The notes under the pieces are model-generated. The model saw only the letters and a program-made list of their open reading frames with translations, was not told the origin of the DNA and searched no databases. From Paragordius varius (lineage: Eukaryota; Animalia; Nematomorpha): a DNA stretch of 64,000 nucleotides. Position numbers and translations under genes: made by a program. Shown here one piece after another: positions 1,708 to 57,100 of the stretch; position 1 is the first letter of the stretch, and the number at the start of each line of letters is the position of its first letter. The stretch covers positions 8,184,001-8,248,000 of the forward strand of contig OZ176051.1 of assembly GCA_964247055.1 (NCBI GenBank). Reading direction: 5' to 3'.

Positions 1708-3084
1708 ATGGAACCCATAAACTCTGCAAGTACGACTCTTTTGTACCGGCATCATAATGAAACAAATAACAGTATTTTACCTTTTTGCGATGACGTAAGC
1801 ACTTACACTCCACTGTCACATTTCCTTTTCAATTACCTTATACCGCTGATAATTGTTTTGGGAATTTTTGGAAATCTTTTTGGTCTTTTTATCAATGTAA
1901 GAATTTATGGTGGGGGAACATACAGTTCTGGGTGCATGCGCCGCACATTAAACGCCATATTTGGGCTAAAACAACTGCCTACAACCCTAAGAAACAATCA
2001 TCAAAATATGGGGCATGGCCAAACTTCTCGGCATTCGTTAACTAAACGAGCAGATTACGTTTTAGTTAAAGCAATGTATAGCGTAAACTTGATAAGCACA
2101 CTACTTATGTTAATATGGCCCGTTATAGATCACAATATGGCTGAAACGTTTCAACTTAAGTTTAATTGGAGGTGGAATGTCTACATTGTTCATTACCATG
2201 TGACTATCTTTAAAACTTTTTTAATCTACAGTTTTTTGATAACTTTCTTGTTTTCCCTCGATAATTTTTTGGCTGTTATGAAACCTTACATATACAAACG
2301 AATCAGTAATAATAAGATGGCCCGATATTCACTTCTCGCCTGCCTTTTTTATGCAATCATATGGAGTATTCCAATATCCCAATGGTATTCATTGAATAGC
2401 GTTAAATGTTGGTCAACAAACATAAATTCACACACAAATTCTAACATAGTACTTACAAAATATGAAAGAATTGAGCGTACTTACAACAAACGTCAAGCAA
2501 TTTTATGGACCTTTTATCAAATCGCAAGGGAGTTTGCTGCAAAATTTATCCCTTTTATCGCACTGTTTACCATGCAAATTTTAAACATGAAGCGTAGAGC
2601 CACAGTTGCAAGTAATACTTTAAAATATGTCTTTTCCACGAGCAATAGCGCAAATATAGCTGAAAGTCCCGCCAAAGTCGAATGCAAAAATTTTACCTTT
2701 AGCCCAAGAGTCAAATGTGAAAAGCCAAATGATAAATCTTCATATGTTACGCAGAACACAAAAAACAATTATTTAGAAAAGCGGCGATTAGAAATTCAAA
2801 AAAATCGGATTTTCAGGATACTATTTTTGGTACAATTTGTTTTGTTCATGTTACCAAGCGGTTTATTTCACCTTATATTAGCATTGACAGATAAAAAATA
2901 TGTGTCCCAAAAATTTATTCAAAATGGATGGACCATTTCCTATATGCTGGAGTGTGGATATGTGTGCATTACATTCTACCTCAATATCATATTCAATAAG
3001 GGTTATCGAATGTATGTTATTGGAGTATTGAAACCGATATGGAATAATTTAGCATGCAGATTTAAGGGGCAAGGAAACGTTTAA
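1708..3084 (+). CDS. Intronless class A (rhodopsin-like) 7TM GPCR, peptide-receptor/chemoreceptor-like, 458 aa
   Basis: ATG-to-TAA ORF with seven hydrophobic segments. TM1 has PLIIVLGIFGN, TM3 ends SLDNFLAVMKP (DRY region), TM4 has WSIP, an ECL2 Cys is present, TM5 has KFIPF, TM6 has LFMLP, and TM7 is followed by a helix-8-like FNKGYR. Confidence 0.88.
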   Translation: MEPINSASTTLLYRHHNETNNSILPFCDDVSTYTPLSHFLFNYLIPLIIVLGIFGNLFGLFINVRIYGGGTYSSGCMRRTLNAIFGLKQLPTTLRNNHQNMGHGQTSRHSLTKRADYVLVKAMYSVNLISTLLMLIWPVIDHNMAETFQLKFNWRWNVYIVHYHVTIFKTFLIYSFLITFLFSLDNFLAVMKPYIYKRISNNKMARYSLLACLFYAIIWSIPISQWYSLNSVKCWSTNINSHTNSNIVLTKYERIERTYNKRQAILWTFYQIAREFAAKFIPFIALFTMQILNMKRRATVASNTLKYVFSTSNSANIAESPAKVECKNFTFSPRVKCEKPNDKSSYVTQNTKNNYLEKRRLEIQKNRIFRILFLVQFVLFMLPSGLFHLILALTDKKYVSQKFIQNGWTISYMLECGYVCITFYLNIIFNKGYRMYVIGVLKPIWNNLACRFKGQGNV

Positions 3085-8189: not shown

Positions 8190-8528
8190 AACTCTTTTGG
8201 AAAATCATAATAATTTTGAAGATAGCATCTATCGTAAATATCCCTTTTAAAATCGTTCCCATATCAAAACAAAAAAATTATCATTGAGATAAAAAATACG
8301 ATTTTCCCCACTCTTTTATACAATAATTTTAAGTGAAGGGTTAGTTGTTAGTTTATTTTCATTTTTTGCCAAAGATTTCCGACGCCCTTCCCCAACACTC
8401 CTTTTACTTTTTTGATGAATATGATATGGTTAATACCATAGAGCTCTTGTTTTTCCATTCTACTAAATATTTTTACCCATTAAACGAAAAAAAGTATTTT
8501 TTTGATAAATTAAAGGATACATGACTGT
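8190..8528. mobile_element. Family C MITE fragment (TA|CAGTCATG terminus)
   Basis: Ends ggatacatgactg|ta; homologous to 31600-32180 and 54612-54843. Confidence 0.65.
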
Positions 8529-8624
8529 AAGACAAGTTTTATTCCAATATGATGCAATTTTCCTAATACCCCCAACTTCTCTACAATTACTAAATTATTT
8601 TGAGACCCTTTTTTTCGGATTAAA

Positions 8625-11225: not shown

Positions 11226-14200
11226 ACAAATTAATATATGTTAAAAACACAGGCTACAAGTAAAAGGTAAATTATATTTCGAATAAAATTTGATAGCAAA
11301 ATTTATGCATAAAACAAATTTATAAATCAAGTTCTTTTATGTATCAGTGAAAATTAAAGTAAAATATTTTATTAGAATTAAATTTAAGAACTGTGCTACA
11401 ATACTTATCCAAGAATACAATCTGTATATTTCAAGAGAATATTAATATGCAAATTATAGGAAATAAGGCCAACGGTAAGTCCTACGTCCAAAACAAAATG
11501 TTAATAGGTTTGTGTAAAAGTATAGGATAAGTGATAAAAGATAGATAAAAGTTAGAGAGTAAATGATAACAATAGATAATTATAATAATTGGTATAAATA
11601 ATAATTTTAATATAAGATTAATTAGGAATTTTTCGATTTTGAAATTGCGTCAGATGGGTCGAACGCGCGCGCGTGCTAACATCTATCAATTTGTTATAAT
11701 TAGTTCGACCCTTCAATTTTATCATTTTATTTGTTTGTTTAAAGCTGTCAAATGAATATTAATGTGAAAAAAAATAACCGGTTAGGCCTGGCCAGCCACG
11801 GTTTTGGTGTTGTGGCCAATAATACAAAGAGAATCAAAGTAAAACGGGATGCTTGTGTTTTGCTAGTTTAAATGTTGGTTCATTGAAAAGTAAGTTAAAT
11901 GATATTGTGAGAACAATGAAAGTTAAACATATAGATATTATGGCATTACAAGAGACTCGTTACCGCGGAAATGGAGCAAGGACTTTGGAAGATAATTATC
12001 GATTATATTACTCGGGTGAAAGAGACGGACGAAATGGAGTGGCAGTTATCATAAATCCCAAATCCAATCAGGTTAAAGAGGTTAGACGCTATAACAGCCG
12101 AATCATGAATTTGGATATTTTGGTAGGTAACGAGGTCATAACGGTATTTACTATATATGCCCAGCAAAGAGGTTTACCAAAACAAAAAAGGAGGAATTTT
12201 ACGAGACTCTAGATGAAAAATTAGTCGCTCTCCCTCTGCTCAGAAAGTTTTTATGGGGATTTAATGATCATCTTGGTTCAAGTAAGGAATCTTTTGAAAA
12301 TATGGCACGGGGGACATTCTTATGGAGAAAGAAACGAGGAAGGAATTAATTTGCTTAGATTTCAATCTCACAATTTGGCGATAGCCAACAAGTTTTTCGA
12401 AAAAAGAGAGAGTCATCCAGTACCTTACGAAAGCGGCATAAACAAATCTCAAATAGATTTTATCTAGTCCCAAGAGACTTACTGAAGCTTGTATTAGACT
12501 CTATGGTCAAACTTAGAGATTAGTTCGCAATATAATTTACTTATTTGTAAGTTTTTTGTGAAAAAAAGTCTAAACAAATTGTTCCTTGCTTAAAGAGATT
12601 AAAAATTATAAAGTGGGAGAAATTATCTGAAAAAAGCATGCTTTTATAAAAGAAATACGGTTATCCGAGGATAGTGGGTTAAATGGTGAGTGGGATATAG
12701 TAAGCCAGTTAATCAAAAAGGCAGGAACTCTAGTTTGTGGATTTAAAGGCGTAAAATCTCAAGTATACAGAGAGGCTTGGCCTTACAATAAAATAATAAT
12801 ATTGATGTCACGAGAAAAAGTGAGGCTTTTGACAAATGGAGACATGCAAGGAATGATTATGATAGAAATAAGTATAAAAGTTTAAATAAGGAAAAATTAT
12901 TCGGCCAGGTTAAGAAAGTAAAGATGAATTTATTTTATGATGAGTTAAATAGTAAGCAAGGTCCAACAAAGTGTATAAAGTTGGGCAGCAAAGGAATAAA
13001 CGCAGGATGGATTTGCCAGGTTATGCGAATGCAATAAAAGGAAAAAATGGAAACTTGCTGTGCGAAAATGTAGAAATATTAAAAAGATGGAAAGAGTACT
13101 TTGTGAGTTTAGATGAAGGGGTAGGCGAGATATTTTTGGCAAATACAATTGAAGCTACTGATAGAATAAAAGCAATTGCAGAAAAGGAGGTAGAATCCAA
13201 TTTGTTAGAAATGCCAAACAACAAGGCTGTAGGATCGGACGACATTAATATAAATTGTTGGAAAGTGCTTGGAAACGCTGGAGTAAATTGCTTGGAACGT
13301 GTTTTTAATAAAATTGTCGAATGGGGAAAGTTAACTGTGCCTTTATTTGGAAAAGGTGATATAAATGAATGTAGTAATTATAGAGGGATAAAACTAATTT
13401 CGCACACCATGAAATTGTTTGAAAAAATAATTGAAAAGTGAATCAGGAAAATGATATCTATAGAAGGGTATCAATTTGGTTTCATGCCAGGAAAGTCAAC
13501 TGTAGACCTATACATGCGGTTAGGAGGTTGATTCAAAAACACTTTAAAAAAAGAAAGAATTACACGGGGTTTTAATTGACATAGAGAAGGCGTTTGACAG
13601 GATTCCTAGAGAAACTATTTGTGGAGTCTCCGTCGTGAAAAGATGCCAGAAAGTTATTTTAAGTTGTTACAAATAATGTACGAATCCCACACCGCCAGGA
13701 TTAAAACCCTACAAGGTTTATCAGAGCCCTTTTCAATAAAGCATGGAATCTACCAAGGCTCATCACTTAGCCCCTTATTGTTTATAATTTGTATGGACGA
13801 GGTAGCCAAGGTTGTTAATGTAAGTTCAGGTTGGTACTTAATGTATGCAGATGACATAATCATCTTGTCTGATTCATTAATTGAGTTAGAACGGTAAACA
13901 GATGGGTTGTTACACTGGATCAATACGGTCTGAAAGTAAACAAAGCAAAAACTGAACTTACGTTTGGGGGTCCACAACATGAAATGGTAGTTGATGATAG
14001 TTGGGTTCTGAAGGCTAAAGAAAGTTGCAAATATTTGGGAGCTATGTTAAGTTCAGATGGTTCGTTGACCGATGATATTAATTTAAAAATAAAGAGCAGC
14101 TCCAAAAAATCCGAAGGACATTTTAACGTGAATGAAATGAAAATGCTTAGAATGATGTGTGGGGTAACAAGAAAGGAGAGCATTGAGAATAGATTTATTC

Positions 14201-14496
14201 GTGGGAGCACAGATATTAAACCAATAGTGGAAAGAATGTCAAAAAATAGGCTACGTAGGTTCGGGCACATTGAAAGGAGAGATTCTAATTATATTGCAAA
14301 AATAAAAGATAGTCAAATAGTTGAGGGAAAACGAGGACGTGGGCGGCCTAAAACGAGATGGATAGATACAGTAAAAAGAGAGCAGCAGAATACGAGCTTA
14401 ATGCAGAGAACGCCATAGATAGAGTTTTATGGCCAGACAGGTTGTATAACATGACCGCCCTCACGAGTGAAAACATGTAATGTAATAATAATAATA
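11226..14496 (+). mobile_element. Full-length decayed RTE-clade LINE (APE endonuclease + RT pseudogene)
   Basis: APE motifs ASLNVGSL, LQETR and NKSQIDFI. RT motifs NNKAVGSDDI, YRGIKL, QGSSLSPLLF, MYADD and KYLG, with C-terminal GRGRPK. (TAA)n tail; 14-bp TSD ATATTTGGTATATA at 11212-11225 and 14497-14510; several stops and frameshifts. Confidence 0.93.
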
Positions 14497-18741: not shown

Positions 18742-19054
18742 TTATCCGTGTAATTTAATGAGATTTTCTGCCAAAGCAATATATTCCTTTTTAGCTTGTT
18801 CAGAAGCCATACCTTTTTTGCCATTCCATGAGTCCCATTTTGCCTTTTCCTTCAATTCCAGCATACCTGGACGATCTACATGGCTTAAATATTTATTATA
18901 CTGGTATTACAGTCACCTACAGTGGCCTGTTTGTACAGCGCGTAAAGTTTTAATAATTCGTCATCATTGGGTTTTTTCTTTAAATTCTTTACATCTGCAG
19001 CAGCTTTTTGAAATATCTAAAATTTTATGACTGTTTTACGGCATCAAGGTCCAT
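18742..19054 (-). CDS. DBI: Acyl-CoA-binding protein (ACBP/DBI), 87 aa; complement(join(18742..18875,18902..19016,19040..19054))
   Basis: MDLDA|[61 protein letters not shown]...LHG*, with hallmark [12 protein letters not shown] and KAKWDxW; introns of 23 and 26 nt. Absent from the ORF track. Confidence 0.95.
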
Positions 19055-25176: not shown

Positions 25177-28100
25177 GGTGATTAAAAGCATGAAATCATG
25201 TGATTAAAAAGCGGCAAGACATTCAAATTCGATAATAATCATAAAAGGATTTAAAAATATGTTTCTTTTTTTGTAATTATTATTTTTTTTTGGTTTTGTA
25301 AAGTTTTTTTTTATTTGTATGCTAACTATGTAATTTAAAGAGTAATATAATTCATAAATCATCAATCATTGTTTACATATTATCATTTTTTTTCTAGTTT
25401 TTGGTGCCTTTGTATTTTATTTTTAATAGCGTAGCCATAATTTTTTTATTTATAATATTATGCTTACACTGTAAATATAAAGAGTTGTATTATTAAATAT
25501 TTCATATATTATCCAAAAATGACAAAATTTATAGAGATAAATGTTTATATATTATTATATTTTTTTTCTTGACTATCTAGCCATATATTTTTGAGTAAAT
25601 CGGTAGTTAAGAAGGAATGCAATGGTAAACAATGTTTTCTTTCATTTATGATTGCTATACAATGTGAAATATTAATATTATAAATTTATCAAAATTGAAA
25701 AAATTTATAAAGGTTATTTATAAGTAGAATTTATTTTATTATCCTAGATATTTAATTTCTTTTTGTAACGAGGGTTTAAGTGAGAGGGAAGGCAATGGCA
25801 AACCACCCTCGTTTTATTACTGCCAAAAAATAGTTACACTATATGCAATTGACGCACCCTTTCAAAGTTGGGTGTTGGAACGTACGTTCATTAACAGAAA
25901 CCAAACAGGTTATAATTAAACGAGAAATGGAAAGATTGAACTTAGAAATACTGGGTCTAACGGAAACTAAGCGAAAAGGTAGCGCGAAAGCACAAAACGA
26001 AATTTTACATTGTTAAGATCGGCAATAGATGAACAGAAATCAGAAGGCATTGCAGTATTAATAAAAAATAATTTAAATAAAAGTCTCGTTATTTATACAC
26101 CATATACATCCACATTATTAGTCTGAATGCTAAGCCACTTATTACATACATAGTAGTCTATGCTCCTTATCCCAAAGAAGACATGGAGAATTTTTATGCA
26201 AAGTTGCAAATAGTTTTGGATGAAACGAAGAAAGGAGATATAATTATCATAGGAGCTGATTGGAACAGCAAAGTTGGTAGAGGTAGAGTAGATCAAATAG
26301 TCGGGCCATTTGGATCGGGAGAACGAAACGAGGCTCGGGAGGCACTGATCAATTTTTGCCAGGAAAATGAGATGATGATAACCAACACATGGTTTCCACA
26401 ACACAATAGGAGGTTATACACATGGACCTCTCCATGTGAGAAATATAAGAACCAAATCGATTACATAATATGTCCACAAAAATGGAAAAGCTCTATACTC
26501 GATACCAAAACAAGCAAAAGCAGCGATTGCTCTAGCGATCATGAGCTTTTAGTAACCAAAATCAAACTTAAAATAATTAAAAAGGTTTAACAGACATACG
26601 GATATGACACTCGGAACATTCCAAATTTTAGAACAGAAACAAAAGATAGATTAGAAAGATTGGACAATGAATGTAGCTCAAAACATTTATAGGGATCGAT
26701 AAAAAATGTTATTAATGAAGTGGCAAAAGAAAAAGTGCAGAGATTAAAGAGGAAAGATAATAAAAGGATATCAGAAAATAGTTTAGAAATAGCAGAAAAG
26801 GGAAGAAAAGCTAAATCAAGAGGTGATAATAAAATCGTTATATTGGGCCGGGTGATAAAAAATTTTTTTTGACTTGACTTGCAAGTTTTTCAAGTCATGG
26901 CTTGCTTTCATGTGATAAAAAAAATTTAACATTACACGACTTAAGTCAAGCGAGAAAACTTGATAAGGAGGTGATAAAAAATCATATGATCAAGTAAAAC
27001 TTAAAGATTTTGCAAGTGTGGTGTAGGGCACACTTGACAGATTTAAAAATATGGATAAAATTATTTTGGAAACTATTTATATATGTAATTTAGGTTTTAC
27101 ATGTAATTCAAACCTTTGTTAATGCTATAAATTGTAAATTTGATAAATTTTGGCTAATTAATTTATTCATTGGGTGGATATAAACGAGGATAAATTTATA
27201 GAAAAACTTTGCTAATATTTAAGAACATGGCATATAAAAATATGCTAAATATATCAATTCCCTGACCGCAAAAAAATGGATCTTGAAAACTTTTAAAATT
27301 AATAATTAAATATTAATCATGTAAATCTTCGTTTATTAAAAAGGCTATTTTACTATTAACCAATGTATAGAATTTATTTCACCATACATTTATTTCGTAT
27401 GTAATGTTTATAATCAATTAAAAATAATTATGTTATAATGTATAAACATCTTCCCATTAAATTTGCAAATGGACTTCAAACAAAATGTAGTGTGATAAAG
27501 AAATATAAAGTGTTTTAAGGGCGAATGGTTTCATCAATCTAAAAATTATTACCAGGCTGAATATTAAAAATTCTATAATATTAAATAGGATACTTGCCAG
27601 TGAGTTTGAAAAACGTCAATAAATGCATATTGCATTAATTGTTTATCTTTTTGTGCCTTATTTCATAAATTTTGGCTGAAAATGATCAAAATAATTTCTG
27701 TAAAATTCGAATTGGGTAGCAAAAAAATGTTACATTCATAAGCAAAAGACTTGACTTAAGTGTTTTTTTTATCACCGATCTTCAAGTGTTCACTTGCTGG
27801 CTTAAGTAAACTTGCTCAACTTGCCACGCTTGGCTTACAAGTCAAGTGCGACTTTTTTATCACCCCACCCATTATATAACAAAGAATTTCAACGACAAAC
27901 AAGAAAGTATTATGAAAAATTTCTTAATTTACAATGTCTAGAAGTGGAATTAAATAACAAAAAAGGATTAATGCAACCAATGTTCCAGAAACTAAAGCAA
28001 ATGACTCACAAGCCATATATATCATCCCAAAAGATTAAAAAAGAGAATGGCACTATATTGTGCAAACAAACAGAAGTACGAGAAAGATGGAAGGAATACA

Positions 28101-29225
28101 CCCAAAAACTCTATCAGGCCCCTCAAGTAAAAGTGTTTTAAAAGAGGAAGAACATCCAGATATACTAAGAGAGGAGGTGGAATGCTTTAAAACAAATTCC
28201 TAACAATAAAGCGATGGGATTAGACAATATCCCAATAAAGTTTAAAAAGCTATTCCTGTAGAAACGTTACACATATGCCAAAAGGCGTGGGAAACATGTC
28301 AGTGGAACGACTGGATATCATCTGTATATCTCCCAATATAAAAAAGATGATGTACTCCAGCGCGAAAACTACCGAAACATAGCTCTTATTTGCCACGCTA
28401 GTAAAGTCTCGATAAAAATAATACAAAACAGGATGCACAGTATTATACAGTCAGCCAGAAAATTAAGGATTTATGAAGGGAAAAAGCACAAGATACCATA
28501 TATCAAACATGAGAAGGATAATAGAAACATCTAGAGAGTTTCCGAAAGAATGGTCTTATGCTTAACCCTAACAAAACCCTGGAGAAAAGCCTACAATTAT
28601 TATAGGGGGGGGGGGTGGAAATAGAAATAGTTAAACAGTAACGTTTTTGGGCGCAGTAAATTTAGAAGATTGGTTTTTAACTCCTGACATCAGAAAGAGA
28701 ATAGGATTGGGTAAAGAAGCGATGACCAATATAATAAAGATTTGGAAAAACAAAAGCGTAGTAGTTGAAACCAAAAAAAGATTACTCTACTGTTTCGTTC
28801 TCCCGACCACATATGGATGTGAGAGCTGGACTCTCAGAAAAAGAGACAAAGAAAGGCTCATGGCTTTCGAAAAGAGCTGCTGGCGCAGGATGCTACACCT
28901 GGAAGGATAAAATTAAGAATGGAAATCTAACTACAGAAAAAGAGCCTAAAACAAACATCCTGAAGATAATTCTAAAAAGAAATTTAACCTATTTTGGTCA
29001 TGTCATGCGGATCGAATTCTCCAGAGAAAGATACAAAGTTTGGGAAGGTAGAAGGACAAAGGAAACCATGCTGACCATCGATGAGGTGGTTGGATATGAT
29101 AAAAGAGGAGACTAAAATGACATTAAACGATCCCAATCTAGCGGTAAAAGATAGAAGAAAGTGGAAAGAAATGGTGTAAAATATATCCAAAAAGTCGTTT
29201 ACGACTTAGGAATAACCAACCAACC
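25177..29225 (+). mobile_element. RTE (BovB-like) LINE with internal RT deletion and a nested TIR element
   Basis: ggaaggcaatggcaaaccac motif; APE motifs GADWNSKVG, NTWF and KNQIDYI; RT N-half and C-terminal YGCESWTL; (CAAC)n tail; exact 14-bp TSD AAACCGAAATATAT (25163-25176, 29226-29239). The YADD region is missing near 28560-28620. Confidence 0.93.
26844..27871. mobile_element. Non-autonomous TIR DNA element (~1.03 kb) inserted in the RTE ORF
   Basis: TGGG..GGTGATAAAAAA..gacttgacttg mirrored at the right end; flanked by ttatat on both sides; the RTE protein resumes (NKEFQRQ) immediately after. Confidence 0.85.
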
Positions 29226-29454: not shown

Positions 29455-30029
29455 ACTTCGATTCAAATTGGGGTATCTAAATACCTCAAGCTAAATTTAA
29501 TATTTTTAAAAAACTGTTGAAGGAAACGGTCCCAATTTAAGATTATGCTTCTATCCAAATAAAAATTATATAAATATGCCAAAATATCTAAATTAAATTC
29601 AGTTTTGATAAAAAAGATCCATGTCAAACTACTTCAACGCCATTATTATTTTAAAAAATTTTCGCAAAATATCGTCTTCATTTAATTTTAAGGGTAAAAT
29701 TAAAGTTAATTTTTTATTTAAATTACATCTAACATTGATAGAAATAGAAAACGCGTTTTATTTTATTTTATTTTTTAATTTAACCATTTTACCCATATGT
29801 CACGTTGACGAAATTTTTACCTTTCGGTTTTAGCTTAAAATAAGTACAAGTATTTTTGAATAAAATTTATTATGTATTTCGGTTTATTAATTTTATATAA
29901 ATGCAAAATTTTGCCATGGTTTCGATTCCTTACATACTTTTTTAAAGTATTTGATATAAAACAGGCCTGGGGTATCCAACTACCCCAATTTGAATCCAAG
30001 GACTAAAATGAGTGTGTTGTATCCAAGTG
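29455..30029 (+). mobile_element. Family A MITE copy 5
   Basis: cttcgattcaaattggggta start (terminal CA and TTAA lost) ... ATCCAAGTG|TTAA. Confidence 0.85.
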
Positions 30030-30095
30030 TTAAAAGCGTTAAAGTTGTAGAAACATATAATTTTTTGCATTCACATTTTAACGCGCGTTCCTGTC

Positions 30096-32395
30096 ATGTC
30101 TGATGCCGTAACTTTTTTTCAAATTATATTTTAGGATAACGCAACTAATGAAGAGCAGAAAAATGAATCTGAATTTTTAAAACTCAAAGTTATTGGTCAG
30201 GTTATATTTTAATTTTATTTTCAAGGATGGCAATGAGATTCATTTTCGTGTAAAAACCACCACACGCATGGAAAAATTAAAAAAATCATACAGTGAGCGC
30301 ATGGTTTATAAATCTTTATAATATAGGGTATTCCTGTTAGTTCATTACGGTTTCTTTTTGATGGGCGCAGAATTAACGATGACGATACCCCAAAATCGGT
30401 TTTTTATTTTATAACTTGTTAAAATTATTTTTTTATGTTTATTATAGAATTTTAGTGCTAATAGATGGTAATTGATTTCAGTGTTTACTAAAATTATTAA
30501 TATGTTCCATAAAATTTAGTTAATCGTTAAACTTTTTTTGCTCGCTATTTTATTAGAAATTATAATAATTTTCTCAAAAAATATAGATTATGATGGTGAT
30601 GGATTTAAATATTGTTAGATTAAATTATATTATGTACCACAATAGGTCAATCCATATTAACAGGAATAAAAATTTTATATTTTATTTGTGCTTTTTAAGT
30701 TCTATCATACAAAGGTGTTTGATGTTCTAAATTTTTGCATATTAAAATTATCCCAAGAGCTTAAGTCATAATATATATATATATATATAAATGTATTACA
30801 CTGTCCAAAAAATTTTTAACAAAATAATTTTTTTTTCATGGGATAGCTTATCACTTACAATCATTTGCTGTAAAATTTTTTATATGTTTACAACCTAGTT
30901 TTTGAAATATTTAGGGAAAATCGAAATCGGGCAAAAAGTGAAATTTAAAGAAAATTAAATATTATTCAAAAAATTAATATATAATTAGCCTAAAATCATA
31001 TAATTAAAAAAAAATTTTTTATGAAATATTAAAATAATTTTTTTTATTTATTAGCTAAATCAGTATTAAAATTTTAACATTCATATTCAGTAAAGAACAT
31101 ATTAAAATCAAACTAAAAAATATTGTTTTATTTTTTCATTTATTTGTCACTGCTTTATGACAGTATAAAAAATGTACTATACTATTTTGGAATTTTACAT
31201 GAGCTAGAACATATAAATTAATAATTAACAATTAGTGGAAAATCAACCAAAAATCCTTACATATCCTAGTAAAAATATTAATTTGTGTTAAAACAATTTT
31301 TTAAAAGGGATATAAGGATTTTTGGTTGAATTCCACTACTTTTAAATCCTATGTTTTATAAATTATATAGTTAATGATTCTGTAATATTCCAAAATAAAA
31401 CAGTTAAATTTTTTACACACTCATAAGCCAACTGACAGAAAAATGAAAAAAATAAAAAATATTTTTTGTTTTATTTTAATATATATTTTTTTACCAAATA
31501 AAATATGAATGTTAAGAATTTAATATTAGTTTAGCTGGTAAATAATAAAAAAAATATTTTAATACAGTTTCATAAATTTTTTTTTGTCTTTTAAGGTAAA
31601 GAAGTGTGGGGGAAGGGTGTCGAAAATCTTTTATAATAAGAATGTATTCCAGTATAATGCACTAACATCTAACTATTCATCTTAAAATTATGTTAAAAGA
31701 GTTTGGTAATAATTTTTTTGCTATTTTTTAAAAAAAACTTTTTACTATTTTATTTAAAAAGAATGATATTTTAACAAAATACAGTCATGTATTCTTTATA
31801 TCAAAAATTCATAATTTTTCGTTAAATGGGTATAAATATTTGGTAAAGAATAGAAAAAACAAGATCATTATGGTATTAACAATATCATATTCATCAAAAA
31901 AGTATAAGAGTTACCATAGAGCTCTTGTTTTTTCCATTCTTTACCAAATATTCATACCCATTTAACGAAAAAAATAAATTTTTGATAAAATAAAGGATAT
32001 ATGACTGTTGAACATATTTTACCATATAAGATTTTCGTCCCCCTTCCCCCACACCTCTTTACTTTTTTGATGAATATGATATTGTTAATACCAAACTCTT
32101 GTTTTTTCTATTCTTTAACAAACTTTCATACCCATTTAACGAAAAAAATAAATTTTTCCTAATATAAAAGAAACGACACTCTATGTAATTTATTTGCCCA
32201 TAAATGTAAGCCCCAAAATTTTAAACACCATTTTATTAAAAATATACTATTCTTCTCCAAATGAGAACATCCAGATCAATTATCATTAATTATTTTATTA
32301 AACTACATTTAAAAAGTTTTTAATAAAAAATATAGCTTGATATGGAAAATGACGATGTTATAGAAGTCTATTCTGAACAATCTGGTGGATATTAA
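30096..32395 (+). CDS. SUMO1: SUMO (SUMO1-type), 95 aa; join(30096..30107,30135..30200,30226..30303,30327..30398,32336..32395)
   Basis: MSDA|DNATNEEQKNESEFLKLKVIGQ|DGNEIHFRVKTTTRMEKLKKSYSERM|GIPVSSLRFLFDGRRINDDDTPKS|LDMENDDVIEVYSEQSGGY*; all introns GT-AG phase 0, of 27, 25, 23 and 1937 nt. Absent from the ORF track. Confidence 0.96.
31008..31585. repeat. ~570 bp imperfect palindrome in SUMO intron 4
   Basis: gtggaaaatcaaccaaaaatccttacatatcc mirrored by ggatataaggatttttggttgaattccac; the arms continue outward about 250 bp. Confidence 0.7.
31782..32007. mobile_element. Family C palindromic MITE in SUMO intron 4
   Basis: cagtcatgtattcttt ... aaaggatatatgactg; homologous to 54612-54843. Confidence 0.8.
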
Positions 32396-32704
32396 TTTTT
32401 TATATTGTATTCATTTATGTAAAATGTCTTAATTTTCTAATCTCATGCATACAGATATTGTACAAATAAATTTTACTTGCTCTTATACTGCCTTTTATAA
32501 GCTATATAAGTATCATTAAAAAGATCAATACAGTGTGCGATAAAGAGGTAAAGTTTTATAAATACTATTTTAATTTTAACACTAATCTCCACCTAATTAA
32601 ATATTTGTGAAAAAGTTATTTAATATTCATTTACCCTTATGCAATTTTTATTATTTTTTTAAATTAGGCTTTCTAATGGTTTAATGAAAAGCTTAGTATA
32701 GGCA

Positions 32705-42300: not shown

Positions 42301-43028
42301 AAAACTTTGTATCCAAAAACCAGGGTTTCTAAAAAATAATATATTTAACAATTAGTATATAAAAGGAATAATAATAATTATTAAATTTTACCTTCCATAA
42401 AATACTGATCCCATACGTAAATGCGGTAAGGTAATATGCAAAACGCCAGCTAAACAAACAAAACATATAATGTTTTGAGATTATTTATTTATGGTTTTTA
42501 GAATAAAAATAATATTTTTAAAAATATAAACCAACTCTCGGAAAATTTGGCCAATTTGGCATTATATGCCTTGGACTTTATTTCATCATAAGAAACTTTT
42601 TGTTTAAGTTCATGTATAAGAGTTGTATTGCTATATCCATTACGCAAGACACAAGTGCCATTAATTGGTTCTAAACAATTATTACATTTTGAAAATTACT
42701 TATATATCCATTTCTCAAAGTGTTTTTGTTCGATATAAAATCAATCCTTTTATATTTATGAATTGATTTGTCCAGCCCAAAAAATTTTGCCAAATATATT
42801 GCAATAGTTCTAAATTTAAACTAAAATTTACTTTTCATAAAAGTATCGGATAATAAGGATAATTTGAGCAAATATAAGAGGCGTCCAAAGGTCAGAAAAC
42901 TGTGGATAGTAATTTAACTGACTAGGTTTATTTTGGAGATCTGACCATTTAATGGGATAAGGTAGCCAAAATATAGGGTTCCAAAACCAGTCAACAAAAA
43001 ATTTGTAATTAGAAGCGAGTAAATTCAT
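36355..43028 (-). CDS. CERS: Ceramide synthase (TLC/Lag1 family, CerS5/6-like N-terminus), 384 aa; complement(join(36355..36465,37482..37641,38068..38174,39071..39199,40955..41047,42278..42328,42392..42449,42532..42670,42700..42809,42832..43028))
   Basis: WFWNPIFWLP, KFSESCWRFAYY, RKDFWQMFAHH (Lag1p HH), VIHDAVD, TRLIIFPY and KDERSD. Ten exons join in frame; introns are 22, 29, 82, 63, 1230, 1755, 896, 426 and 1016 nt. Confidence 0.95.
37180..37408. repeat. Hairpin MITE in CerS intron 9
   Basis: agacaaccatactttttcaaac mirrored by gtttgaaaaagtatggttgtct. Confidence 0.7.
38231..38395. repeat. 165-bp hairpin MITE with perfect 36-bp TIR in CerS intron 7
   Basis: 38231-38266 is the exact reverse complement of 38360-38395. 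Confidence 0.85.
38410..38757. mobile_element. Family B MITE copy 2
   Basis: TACCATTTAC TIRs; about five 21-bp agggtgaatttgaattgttca units at the right end (source of the spurious EQFKFTL-repeat ORF). Confidence 0.85.
39600..40638 (+). mobile_element. Decayed mariner (DD34D, Mos1-like) transposon in CerS intron 6, antisense to the gene
   Basis: Relics MSNFVP, GKWVPH, KKIMRCVWWN, LLRDNSP, DLAPSN and KWFDEWF; many stops and frameshifts. Confidence 0.85.
41332..41554. mobile_element. Family B MITE copy 3
   Basis: ta|TACCATTTAC ... GTAAATGGTA|ta. Confidence 0.85.
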
Positions 43029-45954: not shown

Positions 45955-47060
45955 TATTTTGTGCAAAAAAGGTTAATTTTTTTAAAATATTTTTTTTGTG
46001 AGATTGCTCATTACCAGCGAATTTGCCGCAACATTTTTTTTTGTTTACGACCTAAATTTTGAAATATTGAGAGAATGTCAAAATTAGGCCAAAAGTAGAA
46101 AATTAAGGATAATTGAAAAAAATAAAGACAAAATTTGATATATTATGGTTTATTACCATTGGAGATATTTTCAATAGGCCTAATATCATATAGTTAGGTT
46201 TTTATAAAAACTCAAATCAAATAATAGTTTTTTTCTTTTTGTTTATGAAACTTTAAATAATTTTTTATTTTATACTTGCTAAATACCATTAATATCTTAA
46301 CATCCAAATTTTATTCAGTAAAAAATATAGATGAAAATAATATTGTTATTTATTTATATTTTTGTCATCTGGTTTATGAGTGCATAATAAATTTACTGTT
46401 TTATTTTGGAATCTTACATAAGCGGGAATTATAAAGTATATAAATTTATGCAAAAATGTAATGGAACAACCAACAATCCGTACGAATCCCTATAACAGGT
46501 TTGTTTTAACACAAATTAATATTTTTACTGGGATTTGGGATCGGTTGATATTCCACTCTTTGTAGATCATATTTTGTAATAATTTATTTACTTTAAAATC
46601 TTCGCTCATGTAAGACTCCAAAAGATCACAAAAAATGAATAATAAAAAATTATTTTTTTACTTATTTTGATATATAAGTTTACTTAAAAAAATATGGATG
46701 TTATTGTGAGTTTAGCTAGTAAAGAAATATTGTTTCCTCAACAAAATTTTGTCTTTTAAGTATGTTAAGAAAGACGCCATTTTTTATTTGAGTTTTTATA
46801 AAAACCCTAACTATATGATTTTAGGCTGTTCGTAAATATCTGCTAAAATGATAAAACTCCATAGTATATTAAGTATTATCATTATTTTTTAAATATCCCC
46901 ATTTATCCTTAATTTTTACTTTTTGCCCAATTTTGATTTTCTCTCAATATCTTAAAAACTAGGTCGTAAACAAATAAAAAATTTTACGGCAAATGAATTC
47001 GCTGGTCAAGCTATCTCAGGAATTAAAAATATTTTGTTAAAATTTTTTTTGCACACAGTG
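45955..47060. mobile_element. Foldback element (~1.1 kb, CAGTG|TA right end)
   Basis: ccagcgaatttgccg/cggcaaatgaattcgctgg and atagttaggtttttataaaaactcaaat/atttgagtttttataaaaaccctaactat are inverted pairs. Confidence 0.7.
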
Positions 47061-48141
47061 TAACACACGCTCTATATTATAAATTGGCCAACAATAATAT
47101 GAATAGGCCAATGCTAGTATAAATATGAACAATGTTTATTATTCAAAAAAACAACCTCTATAACAATAGTTTTTCAGAGCTATGAAAAGAGATAAAAACA
47201 TCAGATTTTACACATAAGTTGTAAGCTAATAAAGTTTTAAAGGAACCAAACTAGGGTAGGATTTCGATCTAACCTATTCTTTTGCGGTTATTGAAAAATT
47301 GGTCAATTAAAACGACGTCACTTTTTTAGAATTATTATTAAAATTTATAAAAACCGGTCATTTAAGAAAGGGTATAGTACGAGCATTTTCAGATATTCAT
47401 ACCCGGTCAGATTATACCCCAGGCACTAAAAATTATCATTAGGCATAAAATTTTTAATGTGTGTGTGTGGAGCGCAAACAGATACTCAAACCTTGAATCT
47501 ATCGAAACGAACAACGCTATTTTAGCAAAGAAAGTGGGAATCTTTGGATCGTATGTAATTGTTATATATATATTCACAATGTTTATTTAAAAAGACGTAC
47601 ATTGACAATGAATTTTAGCGCGTATTCTTTTGATGAAATATAACGAGATAGTAATTAATCCCAAAACGGGAAAAGTTCATATTTTTTACATTTGACAATA
47701 AAATATCAAATTTATTCCTAATATTAAACTTTAACAGATTTCTATTTATTCGAACTCCATAATAAATTTATATTATATTACGCCTAATCGGAAATTATAT
47801 ATAAATATATATATATATATATATTGATTATTAAATGTTTACTAATTAAATCAGTTAAATTTGTTACCCAGTTACTCTATATAAATATTTTTAAATTATT
47901 TATTGTAATGTATATTAAATTTGTTATTAATTTACATTGTCAGAAAATTGGTAATGCGCACATAATATTTTTATATATATATTTTGGTTAATATAATCTC
48001 AAATTAAAGTGTTACAATATATGAATGACGAAAGTGCAGAAATAAGAAATTATGGATATATAGATGAGTATTATGACTAGTACGAACAAATTTACAATTA
48101 CAGCTATATATATTAAAAAAAGTCATTAAAGGAGAGAAAAT

Positions 48142-51100
48142 TTATATCGACCTCCTGGAAAAATTTAATAATTGATTTTCTGTTCTCATAATAGTGTATT
48201 GACAATGACATTTTTTACATTTCATATTGCCGAAATTGTTAGCAGATAAGTCAAAGTTCCAATCATAAGTTTTACAATGTGAATTTTCTTTGGCCCAAAA
48301 TTGTAATTTTAATTTATTTTTAAGAATAGTCGAAGCTTTTAACAAAGAGGTAGAGTTGTTATATATATTGGAAACAACTTTTTGTATCATATTCGGATAT
48401 GTCTTAACAGTTGTTTGACATGCATTGAACAGTGGAGATATCCATTCATGTTTCAACGTTTTAAGCAAAACTGATGGCTTCAATTTGGTTTCTTCCCCAG
48501 TTTGTGCAGATAAAATATCATCAGTTTGGCAAATAACATAATTATCATTTTTGAAAGTATGGGGAAATAAATTAATAGGGTTAGCATTATAATTATTATT
48601 ATTATTATTGGTATTTTCTTCGCCATAAATAAATTTGGGCGATGTTTTTAAATCATCGCCCAACGAATCATTATAAGGTTTAACGAAATTAAACTTATTT
48701 TTATTTGCAATGCCAATATTCTCGTCATTGTAATTAACATCATCTAAATTTGTTTCTTTTAACACTATATTTGATTCTGGACCATCCTTATCATTACATG
48801 ATGGAGAATGTTGGTCTCGGTTATTATCTGCTGTAACAAGGGGGGCTATCAGCCTATTTTTTAATTTACCCCACGGACTTCTAAAATTGGTACCAGTTCT
48901 TTTATCGTTTGGACTGTCGGGTGGTAAAAATTGTCCGTTACATATTGTACCCACTTCATTACTAATCCCGCCTATCGGACCCTTATACGTAGGTGAAGTG
49001 ATAAAGGGTGATGTATAAGGCGCATCTTCAAACGGTAACATACAATCTTCAACTTGAACGGCGTTATCCTGCTGTTTGCCCTGCTGGGCCTCCCAAGTTT
49101 TGTAGGGTGCATTTGAAACAGGAGAACTCGGGGCACATAGCCCCCCGGTACTGGATGACAAGGAGACGCGTTTGAGATTGTTGGATTCCGTCATAACTGG
49201 TGCTCCAATTTCCTCTAAATCTTTTAAGCTTAACGTGCTTGCCCCTACACCACCCGTTGCTGTGGGACGCGATGAGATGGGTGAGTTCATAATGCGTCGA
49301 CGACGGCGCAAAGATTCATTTGTAACTGATTTCCCCCACTTACCCTGGCTATGCATGTTAAATTTAAATGTTAAATTTATATATAGAATTCTTATAAAAG
49401 TTTTACTTGCTTAATATATATTCAGATTATAAAATATTTATGATCTAAGGTTATGATATATAACTGAAATGTTCAAACCTAATTTTTGAAAGACAATTTT
49501 ATATACCCCGATTCGTTTGATTCATATTCCAAATTTACAGACGGATCATCAAGATTTGTATTTGGTTGTGGTCCAGTATTTTCATCAAGACTATTTCGAG
49601 ATATGTTCTTTTCCCGATCATAATCAAAATTTGGATTTGGGCCTCTTGATTCATCATCTTGATTATCTTCCTCTTCTTGTTCTTCTGGAGTTTCCGTTAG
49701 CGTTTTTCCCTTTAACTTAGATATGGACATTAAGCTCTCACTTCTAGGTGTTTCGTTTTGTGTCTCCAGGCCTTCAGTATTCTCGCTTTGTTGTTGCTGA
49801 TTTGAAATAGCTTTTGCTGCGGCATTTATGTCACTGATGGCCCTCGAAAAGTAATTAAGACGTGAATCCAAAGAATACTGTCTGTTTTTAAATCTTTTTT
49901 GCCTCGCACTCATTAATGAGTTTGACGAGGGTGTAGTTCCAGATCTATCACTAGGCATTTGTCCGGCTACCGTTCCAACTGACTTTTCTTTTTCAAATAG
50001 ATTGGCTATGGCCTGTTTAAAGAGTGCGCTACTCCCGGACTTGAAAGGGACGTCCGATTTTTCATAGTCAGATTCGTTTCCGCCTACAGGGACATCCTTT
50101 TGTTCGTTTATCGTGTTTGATATCTCTATAGAAGGTACATTTGCTTTTGATGGGCCCTAGAAAGTGTCAAATTAAATATGAACAAGATATCTATGTTGCA
50201 ATCCTTTAAAAATAAATGTTTAAAAGGTGATTAATAAACATAAGAAATGTCAAAAAATTTAATATTCATATAACTTGTCGAAGTGGGGAATCTTCAGTTT
50301 GTAAACGTCGTAAATGCTGAGCTATATCATTAACTACTTGCGGGTTCTCAAAAATGGCCGCATAACTACCATTAATAAATTGTGGCGAGTGTGGTGTATT
50401 ACTCAATAATAGGCTTACACCAAATCCGCTACCTCGCCTATCCTCTTTGTTCTTTTTGTATTCGCTTTCTGTCATCTTTTCCACTATTTTGTTACGTTCA
50501 GCCCCCAATACATCATCGTAAGGTAGCAGTTCAGTGGCTCGCCTTCTGGCCGAAGCTCTTGGGTCAAAAATAACGCTCATTTGTTTATGTGGAATCTTTT
50601 TAAAACGCCGTCCTGTCTTAGGCATTACACTAGCTAAGGATTTGGATGGGACCTTTTTACCATATGGCAGAGATAGTGAGGTCTCCCTCTCTTCCGAAAC
50701 ATCTTTGAATTGAACTGATTTTCTTTGGTCTGTTGGCAGGGTGCTTGATGGTATATTTTTATCCGTAGCTAGCTTACCTGTTTCAATCGTATCACGGGAG
50801 GCAGTCTCGTCTTGGGATACGGAACTACTATCTTTCGTAGATATATTGGTTTGATCTTCGCCCAAGCCCGATTCCTCATCACTAATTTCTACTTCGATTT
50901 CTTCTTCTACTTCTTCCAACCATAATCCACCCAATTTGATTACAACCTCACGGGCTGCTGCACTTATAATTACCCAATCTCTCCTAATATCGTTTTCTGT
51001 GGTGTATTGTGATGTCACCGTGAATCTTATAATGTAAACACCTTTTAAAGATGCTGGTACCATGTGCAACTTACCAGACGAATTTAGCGATTTCAAAAGC

Positions 51101-54100: not shown

Positions 54101-57100
54101 ATAAAATATATATAATAATACACCAATTTAAAAAACTCGATTGTCGGTAATATTTAAGAAGTCTTCTTTTTACCTTATAAAAATTATAATTTTTTGTATC
54201 ATTTTTAATGAAAAATGTCATTATATTGATTCATTTTAAACGATTCCTCAGAAAACAAAATCCGTGATATGCCATAAAGGTAAAATTTAACAATTTTATA
54301 AACTCTTCTAACAATAAAAATTGTAATTAAGTTATTATTATGTATATAGTATATGAGACGTTCAAACAATGACGACTGGTTATAAATATCGAATATTTGC
54401 AGGATCTTATTTGAAACAATGATTTTTGGATTAACAGATTATTTTACATAAAAAGGGATAAATCCCTGGGTACGATCATCATCTATTGCCTCCTTGAGTG
54501 TTTTACCACGAAGGGATAGCTCATTATCAGTCGCTAAGTATCGCATGCGCACCAAACCAATCAAACCTGCCTTCTCAACAGACGAATGAGCCTATAAAAA
54601 TAAACCATTTACAGTCATGTATCCTTTATTTTATTAAAAATTCATTTTATTTTTTTTGTTAAATGGGTATAAATATTTGGTAAAGAATGAAAAAACAAGA
54701 GCTCTATGGTAATTCATATATTTTTTTGATAAATATGATATTTTATATACAATAGAGCTCTTGTTTTTCCATTCTTTACCAAATATTTATACCCATTTAA
54801 CGAAAGAAAATAAATTTTTTATAAAATAAAGGATACATGACTATAACAAAACATAATGATGGATTGCTAAATTTTTATTAGCGTGTGTTGTGCTGTGCAA
54901 TCTTATTTAAATAATATACTTGGTCAGAACAATAAGCTATCAAACGGCCATTGATTTCTGAATCATCTTTCTCTGGATAAAGTTCCTGAACCTTTCGGAT
55001 TGCCTCAGTCCTGGCAGCCAAAACGGATATAAAGGTTGCCTCGCTGGCTGTTGTCTGATATATTAAATTTTTTTTATAAGTTTTATGGTTTTTACCATTC
55101 TATAATATACCAGTTTGGTATTATAAGATATTTGCCCTCTTAGTGATTTGCAAAAATATATTTATATATAATACAAATACATTAATTATTTATTTTATGG
55201 AAGAAAAATTGAACTATAAAATTTATACTTGGATGACACCACCCCCCGCTGTTTGTGTGTTGGAGTGCAAAAAGTCATTGGGCATACCTATCATCTTGCC
55301 TAGCCAATCCATAACTATAGTTTCTAACTCTGTACATGCGGGACTTGAGGCCTATTTTAAGCATATTCGCGGAAATAAATTTTTTGTTAGAATATAAAGC
55401 CTTTTTGTTAATTTTATAAGGCGTTTTAGGCAGATTGAAACCGGGAACGTTTTATTCGTTTAAGCCAATTTTTCCCTAGTTTTGGCTTCAGCTTTTGATT
55501 TTATTATTTAAATCGTTTCTTTTGGGGTAGTTTTGTTTTTAATTTAATGTAATATGAACACATTAAAAATTTTTAAGCCTATAACCTATATATTGTATCC
55601 TGATTGTTTTTCAATCGAAGATACATTTAAATTTTTAAAAAAAGCATCCAGTTTGACACGGTCCCAATCCTAATACTAGTTTTTAAAAATGGTTACAGAA
55701 GGGAAACCCGTAGTTTTAAGATACTATTTCCTTATGCACTATAAATGAAAGTTATTGACAAAAAAATTATATGTTTTATCGATAAAATACCCAAGTGAAT
55801 CCCAAACAATTTATGGCATCAGCAATCATATCTCCCAACAATGAAGGATACGAATTTAAAGCCGGAAAATAGGCATGCATATATGGACTTTGCCAATGCG
55901 TGACCTAGGTTAATTTTAAAATAATTATGAATATGATTAATCTTGAAAACTACATATTTCAGACTTTTCGAATTCGTCTAGCACACTAATAATTATTTTT
56001 TTAGATTAGATTCTATCATATATATTTTCATACGCTTTAATCCATTTATTTCCTGGTTTTATTACAATTTACACTAATTTTCTTATAATTATTTTTATTC
56101 ATACGTATATCGGCCATATTTGTTGTTTTCATAATTGAATAATTTGGACATAATGTTTTTATTTATTATAGTAAAATATATACCTCCACTAAAATAAAAG
56201 TTTATACGGATAATTTTTGTTCAAGGATTAATATACAACCTTAAACCATGGAAAAGGTTTTATGTACAAAAATAAATCCGCGGTTTATTTAAATTAAAAA
56301 TTCATATCATGATTTAACAAAATAGGTCATAAACGTTTTAATTGGGTCTTCATAATAAGTTATTTGTATGATTATTGTTTAGACCAGTGGTTCTCAACCT
56401 TTTTATGTTCACGCCCTAACAAGTCTAAAATAAAAAATCTTGCACCCCTCTCAAAAATATCCAAGATAAAAATGTAAATTTATTATAATATAATAAAAAT
56501 CCCAATCAAAGAGATCCTTGTATTTGCAATTGAAATACTTCATATAGGTGACAAATCCTGATATTTAGCACCTGAAATCCTTCAATTTGTTTGTGGTTTT
56601 ATTTTTAATGAAAGATTCCAAATTTTTCGCACGCCCCTTAGATTTTTCTAAGCCCCACTGTTAGGAACCACTGGAACCATGTAAAATGTCAAAAAATAAA
56701 ACCACTCTTTTGGTTATTTCCAAATTATTTAACCTCATTTAAGTCCAAACACAAAGGTACACAAATAATGTAATCTACCATTTACAATTCAATTTCACCC
56801 TCAAAATTATATGTATTTCAAGATTAAAAATTTCCCATATTAATATATTTTTAAAAAATAAAATTTTGTTTTAAGTATAAATAATACTGAAAAAATAATA
56901 AACGATGACATTAACACTTGGATACAACACATTCATTTTATTCCTTCGATTCAAATTGGAGTTGGATACCCCAGGCCTATATAAAATTAAATACATTATA
57001 AAATATGGAAGGTATCGAAATTATGGAAAAATTTTGCACTTATATAACATTGATAAGCTGGAATATATATAAAATTTATTCAGAAATACTCGATGTTACT

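What the first reader, a model, noticed from the sequence alone, without database searches (positions are those of the whole stretch)
30108..30326. Ultra-short spliceosomal introns (22-29 nt) coexisting with kb-long introns in an animal genome
SUMO needs three consecutive GT-AG introns of 27, 25 and 23 nt removed to give a perfect SUMO fold; retention causes stops or frameshifts. Its fourth intron is 1937 nt. ACBP (23, 26) and CerS (22, 29) show the same class, 7 of 29 verified introns. Typical minimal introns are roughly 45-50 nt in C. elegans and 60-70 nt in flies and vertebrates. Introns of 20-30 nt are known mainly from ciliates, nucleomorphs, microsporidia and, among animals, reduced parasites such as dicyemids with compact genomes. 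Here they occur in a TE-rich, intron-rich genome. There is no room for a separate branch point and pyrimidine tract, implying an altered spliceosome that handles both intron and exon definition (inference). The SUMO intron sites match SUMO1 positions as I recall them, indicating shrinkage rather than gain.
Basis: partly seen in the sequence, partly recalled or inferred. Interest (0 to 1): 0.88.

Follow-up and report, generated by a model that had tools for sequence, protein, structure and literature searches.

The report
Tiny 23-27-base introns in SUMO
A horsehair-worm-type genome splits its SUMO gene (and two neighbouring genes) with introns of only 22-29 bases. They sit exactly where spiders, mayflies and scorpions have ordinary introns, so this would be a third animal group with introns under 30 bases, although I could not show the cutting in RNA.

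Summary
SUMO (30096-32395, +) gives an intact 95-aa SUMO only if GT-AG segments of 27, 25, 23 and 1937 nt are removed. Keeping any one of them gives a stop or a frameshift.

New here: the 25- and 23-nt introns lie at exactly the codon and phase where a spider has introns of 15,040 and 2,812 nt and a mayfly has 54 and 56 nt. The two ACBP micro-introns (23, 26 nt) match scorpion introns of 624 and 126 nt. These are shrunken ancestral introns, not insertions or errors.

- **Census:** all 27 introns I mapped in the window are GT-AG. Seven measure 22-29 nt and twenty measure 63-1937 nt.
- **Placement:** the short ones are adjacent and are the first introns of their genes.
- **Lineage:** Nematomorpha. 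The ten best matches of a neighbouring receptor gene are all from Gordionus.
- **RNA:** not shown. The three guessed-RNA runs held nothing at this locus.

Introns under 30 nt are published for myxobolid myxozoans and a dicyemid only. The two-class, 5'-clustered layout is published for flatworms, with a mode of 37 nt. The "altered spliceosome" inference is untested.

The scan has already noted this intron class in many other windows of the same genome.

The parts
30096..30107 (+). SUMO exon 1 (ATG, encodes MSDA)
   Evidence: The N-terminus MSDA matches the mite and other SUMO N-termini.
30108..30134 (+). SUMO intron 1: 27 nt, GT..AG, phase 0, 85% A+T, contains an in-frame TAG
   Evidence: The equivalent phase-0 intron lies after residue 3-6 in Daphnia, mayfly and spider.
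30135..30200 (+). SUMO exon 2 (66 nt)
30201..30225 (+). SUMO intron 2: 25 nt, GT..AG, phase 0, 88% A+T
   Evidence: Same codon boundary (GQ|D) as the spider intron of 15,040 nt and the mayfly intron of 54 nt.
30226..30303 (+). SUMO exon 3 (78 nt, the same length as in spider and mayfly)
30304..30326 (+). SUMO intron 3: 23 nt, GT..AG, phase 0, 87% A+T
   Evidence: Same boundary (ER[MLV]|G) as spider 2,812 nt, mayfly 56 nt and Daphnia 64 nt. DNA run X1 differs at 30319 (T>A) and keeps the intron's length and ends.
30327..30398 (+). SUMO exon 4 (72 nt, the same length as in spider, mayfly and Daphnia)
30399..32335 (+). SUMO intron 4: 1937 nt, GT..AG, phase 0. At least about 60% of it is palindromic MITE-like repeats.
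   Evidence: The repeat parts have 100-1000 times the depth of unique DNA in run X1. Same site as spider 5,910 nt, mayfly 66 nt and Daphnia 71 nt.
32336..32395 (+). SUMO exon 5, ending ...SGGY plus TAA
19017..19039 (-). ACBP intron 1: 23 nt, phase 0, after residue 5
   Evidence: Same site and phase as the 624-nt intron of scorpion ACBP.
18876..18901 (-). ACBP intron 2: 26 nt, phase 1, after residue 43
   Evidence: Same site and phase as the 126-nt intron of scorpion ACBP.
42810..42831 (-). Ceramide synthase intron 1: 22 nt
   Evidence: It is the only frame-preserving GT-AG junction. The full model gives 384 aa without stops. Two exons hit the TLC domain, one above Pfam's cutoff and one just below it.
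42671..42699 (-). Ceramide synthase intron 2: 29 nt
   Evidence: Both flanking reading frames are closed by stops inside the segment (my reading of the sequence).

Best explanation
The three segments are genuine U2-type (GT-AG) spliceosomal introns of a hairworm (Nematomorpha) SUMO gene that have shrunk to 23-27 nt. They descend from ancestral ecdysozoan introns at the same sites. They belong to a discrete 22-29-nt class that sits as adjacent first introns of some genes. Other introns in the same genes stay at 63 nt or more, or have been inflated to kilobases by repeat insertions. The most likely mechanism is recognition across the intron (intron definition) by the ordinary spliceosome. The signals would be a minimal GTW 5' site, a WAG 3' site and a very A/U-rich interior (77-88% A+T against 58-68% in the exons), with a branch adenosine only a few bases from the 3' AG. 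Retention would be caught by nonsense-mediated decay, because every one of them introduces a stop or a frameshift. Shown: the anatomy, the conserved positions and the presence in DNA. Inferred: the actual cutting, the branch point and the mode of recognition.
For: The gene model and the effects of retention are, and the Pfam SUMO match. Introns 2, 3 and 4 lie at the identical codon and phase as in spider (exons 18/60/78/72/57) and mayfly (15/69/78/72/63). Introns 3 and 4 also match Daphnia. Intron 1 lies in the same position class, phase 0 after residue 3-6. The ACBP micro-introns match scorpion exons 15/115 exactly in site and phase. All 27 mapped introns are GT-AG, with a gap in length between 29 and 63 nt and similar splice-site letters in both classes. 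Among 76 exonic GT..AG segments of 22-29 nt in 3,795 coding bases, none combines A+T of at least 77% with GTWW..WAG, whereas all seven micro-introns do. DNA contigs of run X1 keep the micro-introns and show no intron-less DNA copy. The two exonic differences are synonymous third positions, against 11 listed differences in about 330 nt of unique intron 4 (Fisher p 0.025). Six of the seven lengths are not multiples of three, and the one that is carries an in-frame stop.
Against: There is no RNA evidence at this locus. Three runs guessed to be RNA under the same species label laid nothing on it at 85% likeness or more. No protein identical to the spliced SUMO or ACBP exists in the 5.8-billion-cluster collection. 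The CerS micro-intron sites could not be compared with an ortholog. The sample is 7 introns in one window, so the sequence rules and the polymorphism contrast are weak statistics, and the variant table was truncated.
Confidence: 0.87

Rival explanations
1. The SUMO copy is a decaying pseudogene or an assembly artefact, and the short segments are small insertions that merely happen to look like introns.
For: No transcript was found.
Against: The segments sit at ortholog intron sites with the correct phase and GT-AG ends, about 1e-11 by chance for four of them. The exons carry no stops or frameshifts. Exonic variants are synonymous only. Contigs of DNA run X1 reproduce the sequence, differing from the window at one base of intron 3, so they are probably not the assembled individual. 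The same pattern occurs in ACBP and CerS.
Confidence: 0.03
2. The segments are removed, but not by the spliceosome. For example, they could be excised at the DNA level in somatic cells (programmed elimination, as with ciliate IESs) or by another RNA-processing route.
For: The lengths resemble ciliate eliminated sequences or tiny introns. Nothing here shows a lariat.
Against: GT-AG ends with GTW/WAG context are shared with the 20 longer introns of the same genes. The positions are homologous to ordinary spliceosomal introns in arthropods. DNA run X1 shows no joined form.
Confidence: 0.03
3. They are real introns, but they are spliced inefficiently or in a regulated way, so a large share of transcripts retain them and are degraded. 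This would be a dosage brake, as reported for the very short microsporidian introns.
For: Every micro-intron gives a premature stop if retained. The literature reports about 25% median splicing efficiency for microsporidian short introns (cited in PMC13644364).
Against: SUMO, ACBP and CerS are housekeeping genes needing robust expression. There are no data either way.
Confidence: 0.07

Closest known systems
Ultra-short (<30 nt) introns of myxobolid myxozoans and of Dicyema japonicum (Hadjez et al., Mol Biol Evol 2026, PMC13644364; Lu et al. 2019, PMC6736024)
   Same: Animal GT-AG introns of 20-30 nt at conserved ancestral positions between conserved exons. The splice-site motifs are reduced (GTa...AG) and there is little or no pyrimidine tract. 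The lineage is parasitic.
   Different: There, short introns are the norm (median 22-27 nt; Dicyema mean 38 nt) in reduced genomes of tiny, simplified parasites. Here they are a minority class (7 of 27) beside 63-1937-nt introns. The host is a macroscopic ecdysozoan whose genome type is reported as 200-300 Mb with about 64% repeats. No RNA proof was obtained here, whereas Iso-Seq supports the myxozoan case.
Flatworm micro-introns (Opisthorchis felineus and other trematodes, cestodes, Macrostomum; PMC6530080)
   Same: There is a discrete short-intron mode next to a kb-scale mode in large repeat-rich genomes. Micro-introns cluster next to each other and toward the 5' end of genes and lack a pyrimidine tract. 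They are missed by default annotation thresholds.
   Different: The flatworm modes are about 37 and 90 nt, not 22-29 nt, and the phylum is different (Spiralia against Ecdysozoa).
Tiny introns of ciliates (Paramecium about 25 nt, Stentor 15-16 nt), nucleomorphs and microsporidia
   Same: The length range is the same. In Paramecium the lengths are biased so that retention causes premature stops. A full set of snRNAs is still present (PMC9505925).
   Different: These are unicellular lineages in which essentially all introns are tiny. There are no kb-long introns in the same gene.

Membership tests
U2-type spliceosomal intron | GT at the 5' end and AG at the 3' end | tested here: met
   All 7 micro-introns and all 20 longer introns are GT..AG. 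None has the U12-type 5' motif (my reading of the 5' sites listed).
U2-type spliceosomal intron | Absent from mature RNA | tested here: inconclusive
   Read laying on 29950-32450: the three guessed-RNA runs laid 0 contigs, and the tool notes this is no proof of absence. No spliced-product protein is in the collection.
U2-type spliceosomal intron | Site and phase homologous to introns of orthologous genes | tested here: met
   SUMO introns 2-4 are exact against spider and mayfly. Intron 1 is within 1-2 codons in a tail of variable length. ACBP introns 1-2 are exact against scorpion. CerS was not tested.
U2-type spliceosomal intron | Branch-point adenosine and lariat formation | not testable with these tools
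   Adenosines lie 5-13 nt upstream of each AG, but that is expected in DNA of 77-88% A+T. No lariat data are available.
Animal ultra-short intron lineages (myxobolid/dicyemid type) | Introns shorter than 30 nt present | tested here: met
   22, 23, 23, 25, 26, 27 and 29 nt.
Animal ultra-short intron lineages (myxobolid/dicyemid type) | Short introns dominate the genome (median under 30 nt) | tested here: not met
   7 of 27 in this window. The median of the 27 is 255 nt. This is one window only.
Flatworm-type micro-intron architecture | A discrete short mode, separate from the long introns | tested here: met
   There is a gap between 29 and 63 nt among the 27 introns. The sample is small.
Flatworm-type micro-intron architecture | Micro-introns adjacent to each other and biased to the 5' end of genes | tested here: met
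   They are the first 3 of 4 introns in SUMO, the first 2 of 9 in CerS and both in ACBP. Random placement would give 1/4 x 1/36 = 0.007 (my combinatorics). HDC, with 12 or more introns, has none.
SUMO (Rad60-SLD / ubiquitin-like modifier) | Full-length ubiquitin-like domain ending in a di-glycine before a short tail | tested here: met
   PF11976 matches positions 1-71 of 72, E 4.5e-23. The product ends ...QSGGY, like the mite ortholog.

The most novel reading that the evidence does not exclude
Hairworms evolved a discrete, 5'-clustered class of 22-29-nt introns independently of dicyemids and myxozoans, spliced by intron definition beside repeat-inflated long introns. Because standard gene finders and completeness tests do not model such introns, part of the reported large-scale 'loss' of universal metazoan genes in Nematomorpha (BUSCO about 70%) would be an annotation artefact.
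Probability: 0.25. Interest if true: 0.8.

Novelty: new member of a known kind. Interest (0 to 1): 0.62.

Why it matters
A 2026 survey of 51 animal genomes found introns under 30 nt only in myxobolid myxozoans and one dicyemid, and tied them to extreme parasitic reduction (PMC13644364). A hairworm would be a third, independent case and the first in Ecdysozoa. Here the tiny introns share a gene with kb-long ones, in a repeat-rich genome. That separates intron shrinkage from whole-genome compaction. It also offers one spliceosome handling 23-nt and 1.9-kb introns in a single transcript.

There is a practical side. Introns of 22-29 nt lie below common annotation thresholds, so hairworm gene sets and gene-loss claims may need rechecking. 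I found no paper on hairworm intron lengths.

Tried and rejected
- **RNA evidence.** The single read-laying run used three runs guessed to be RNA plus one DNA run.
- **Transcript-derived proteins.** Neither spliced SUMO nor spliced ACBP has an identical or near-identical entry (best 82% and 68%).
- **Related hairworm locus.**
  - No Gordionus SUMO or ACBP is among the 120 hits listed for each search.
  - CerS exon 1 used as a query found nothing.
  - The locus of the best Gordionus receptor hit shows no synteny with the window and no DNA similarity to it.
  - A multi-exon Gordionus receptor gene has introns of 850, 1832 and 267 nt, which is uninformative.
- **Own-genome look-up.** An exact look-up of the receptor ORF was not on record.
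- **Rfam.** A scan of the window found no snRNA or other RNA family.
- **CerS ortholog comparison.** I left this out because it would have required typing a 384-residue sequence.
- **Mite and ostracod SUMO genes.** Both are intronless, so they say nothing about intron positions.
- **Rejected readings.**
  - Ciliate or nucleomorph origin: TAA is used as a stop, and the window carries animal genes for histidine decarboxylase and a rhodopsin-type receptor.
  - Myxozoan origin: SUMO is 70-82% identical to arthropod SUMOs, and the receptor family is shared only with Gordionus.
  - U12-type introns: the 5' motif is wrong.

Full report
**The observation.** On the + strand an ATG at 30096 opens a five-exon gene with exons 30096-30107, 30135-30200, 30226-30303, 30327-30398 and 32336-32395. 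The intervening segments measure 27, 25, 23 and 1937 nt. Each starts with GT and ends with AG, and each is in phase 0. The spliced product is 95 aa. It matches Pfam Rad60-SLD over positions 1-71 of 72 (E 4.5e-23) and the ubiquitin family (E 1.3e-17). It ends in ...SGGY and aligns without gaps to arthropod SUMOs at 70-82% identity. Retaining intron 1 gives an in-frame TAG. Retaining intron 2 or 3 shifts the frame into stops, and retaining intron 4 runs into stops.

**The two supporting genes.**
- ACBP lies on the minus strand, with exons 19054-19040, 19016-18902 and 18875-18742. Its introns are 23 and 26 nt, and the 87-aa product hits Pfam ACBP at 4.1e-32.
- A ceramide synthase runs from 43028 to 36355 on the minus strand. 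It has nine introns of 22, 29, 82, 63, 1230, 1755, 896, 426 and 1016 nt. The model gives 384 aa without stops, and two exons hit the TLC domain, one above Pfam's cutoff and one just below it. The two short ones are the only frame-preserving GT-AG junctions between their flanking coding pieces.
- A histidine-decarboxylase-type gene (58013-50275, minus strand, Pyridoxal_deC) has twelve mapped introns of 84-1810 nt and none shorter.
- About two more junctions in the HDC's low-complexity tail remain unsettled: one has two alternative solutions and the next was not found.

**New evidence: intron positions.** I fetched annotated SUMO genes and mapped their exons by exact protein-to-DNA threading.
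- Spider, Uloborus diversus: exons 18/60/78/72/57, introns 8046/15040/2812/5910, all phase 0.
- Mayfly, Cloeon dipterum: exons 15/69/78/72/63, introns 113/54/56/66, all phase 0.
- Daphnia magna: introns 222/64/71.
- This gene: exons 12/66/78/72/60.

Introns 2, 3 and 4 fall at exactly the same codon boundaries as in spider and mayfly (GQ|D, ER-x|G and PK-x|L). Introns 3 and 4 also match Daphnia. Intron 1 is a phase-0 intron after residue 4. The corresponding intron follows residue 3, 5 or 6 in the other three, within a tail of variable length. As in the mayfly, it sits directly before a DN dipeptide.

For ACBP, the scorpion Centruroides vittatus has exons 15/115/63/71 with introns of 624/126/140 nt. 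The 23- and 26-nt introns here follow residue 5 (phase 0) and residue 43 (phase 1), exactly as the first two scorpion introns do. The third scorpion intron is absent here.

GT and AG each occur at about 0.042 per position in the window. Correct ends at four ortholog-defined sites by chance are therefore of the order of 1e-11 (my arithmetic). This supports shrinkage of ancestral introns. It argues strongly against insertions, sequencing errors or newly gained introns. The mite and ostracod SUMO genes are intronless and uninformative.

**A discrete class.** The sorted lengths are 22, 23, 23, 25, 26, 27 and 29, then 63, 82, 84, 98, 109, 174 and so on up to 1937.
- Both classes use GT(A/T)...(T/C/A)AG.
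- The micro-introns are 77-88% A+T, against 58-68% in the coding sequences.
- They are the first three of four introns in SUMO, the first two of nine in CerS, and both in ACBP. Under random placement that is 1/4 x 1/36, about 0.007 (my combinatorics).
- Six of the seven lengths are not multiples of three, and the 27-nt one carries an in-frame stop.
- The 3,795 coding bases contain 76 GT..AG segments of 22-29 nt. Only one reaches 77% A+T, and none also has GTWW..WAG, whereas all seven real ones do. Simple composition plus minimal splice sites could therefore define them in principle.

This is seven introns in one window, so these rules are suggestive only.

**The long intron.** At least about 60% of SUMO intron 4 consists of palindromic, MITE-like repeats. 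Copies lie elsewhere in the window at 46021-47067, 54610-54842 and 8372-8529. In DNA run X1 these stretches have 100-1000 times the depth of the unique parts. The kb length is thus largely due to repeat insertion.

**Reads.**
- The run search found DNA holders only.
- I laid 29950-32450 on three runs guessed to be RNA under the same species label, plus DNA run X1.
- The RNA guesses laid nothing, which the tool says is no proof of absence.
- X1 contigs cover 30009-30388 with the micro-introns in place and no intron-less joined form.
- X1 differs from the window at 30319 (inside intron 3, with ends and length kept), at 30389 and at 32347. The last two are third codon positions and synonymous.
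- Eleven differences are listed in about 330 nt of unique intron 4 (Fisher p 0.025). The variant table was truncated, so this is weak support that the gene is under purifying selection.

Cutting in RNA remains unshown at this locus.

**Lineage.** The single-exon receptor ORF at 1708-3081 has only 23 matches among 1.84 billion representatives. The ten best are all proteins of Gordionus sp. m RMFG-2023, a horsehair worm, at 25-32% identity. SUMO and ACBP are closest to arthropod proteins. The window shares no DNA similarity, not even in repeats, with 21 kb of Gordionus chromosome. It is therefore a nematomorph or close kin, but not that species. Published hairworm genomes are 200-300 Mb. Gordionus is reported at about 27% G+C with about 64% repeats, and the window's own G+C is 22-35%.

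**Literature.**
- Hadjez et al. 2026 state that introns under 30 nt are generally considered absent from animals. Among 51 genomes they found them only in myxobolid myxozoans (median 22-27 nt) and Dicyema japonicum. The splice motifs there are reduced to GTa...AG, while the U2 branch-point-interacting region and U2AF1/2 are retained. The authors predict that more lineages will be found.
- Flatworms have micro-introns with modes at 37 and 90 nt beside a mode near 3 kb. These are clustered, biased to the 5' end, lack a pyrimidine tract and are often missed by annotation.
- The Gordionus genome paper does not contain the word intron. No held paper discusses hairworm intron length. Cunha et al. 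2023 is not held.

**Verdict.** The segments are almost certainly real, shrunken ancestral introns (confidence 0.87). The case is a new lineage for a known phenomenon. It combines the sub-30-nt size known from myxobolids and dicyemids with the two-class, 5'-clustered layout known from flatworms. Earlier notes of this scan report the same class in many other windows of this genome, and one says RNA showed such cutting in another gene. I did not test that claim.

**A hypothesis to test.** Gordionus SUMO and ACBP are both absent from the 120 hits listed for each search. From my own knowledge, some gene finders use minimum intron lengths near 40 nt. Together these raise the untested possibility that hairworm annotations and gene-loss estimates suffer from this intron class.

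Noticed in passing
window 30792-31585 and 31780-32170, with copies at 46021-47067, 54610-54842 and 8372-8529: Two families of palindromic, MITE-like repeats fill most of SUMO intron 4 and recur in or near the CerS and HDC genes. In DNA run X1 their depth is 100-1000 times that of unique sequence.
   Followed up: partly
window 1708-3084 (+): A single-exon 458-aa rhodopsin-type receptor has only 23 relatives among 1.84 billion representative proteins. The ten best are all from Gordionus. This looks like a hairworm-specific receptor expansion.
   Followed up: partly
proteins P0001-P0005, P0009: The best-scoring SUMO hits from marine and ENA transcript sets are head-to-tail tandem SUMO repeats (poly-SUMO precursors, laid out like polyubiquitin). 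Their organism is unknown.
   Followed up: no
(protein searches): No Gordionus SUMO or ACBP appears among the 120 hits listed for each search, although Gordionus proteins are in the collection. These genes may be missing or mis-modelled in that annotation.
   Followed up: no
window 48142-50013 (-): The histidine-decarboxylase-type gene seems to continue into a long, low-complexity, Ser/Asn/Glu-rich C-terminal tail (ORFs of 159 and 404 aa). One junction has two alternative solutions and the next was not found.
   Followed up: partly
window 11853-14418 (+) and 26183-29115 (+): There are fragmented ORFs of non-LTR retrotransposon type (endonuclease and reverse-transcriptase-like), judged from their translations only.
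   Followed up: no
window 30105-30109 and 19042-19038 (-): The first introns of SUMO and ACBP both follow the same codons, GAT GCC (Asp-Ala), only 4-5 residues after the start codon. This is probably coincidence.
   Followed up: no
window 42532-42809 (-): The region of the ceramide synthase between its first membrane segment and the TLC domain (about residues 66-150) looks unlike the homeobox-type insert of many animal CerS. This was not tested.
   Followed up: no
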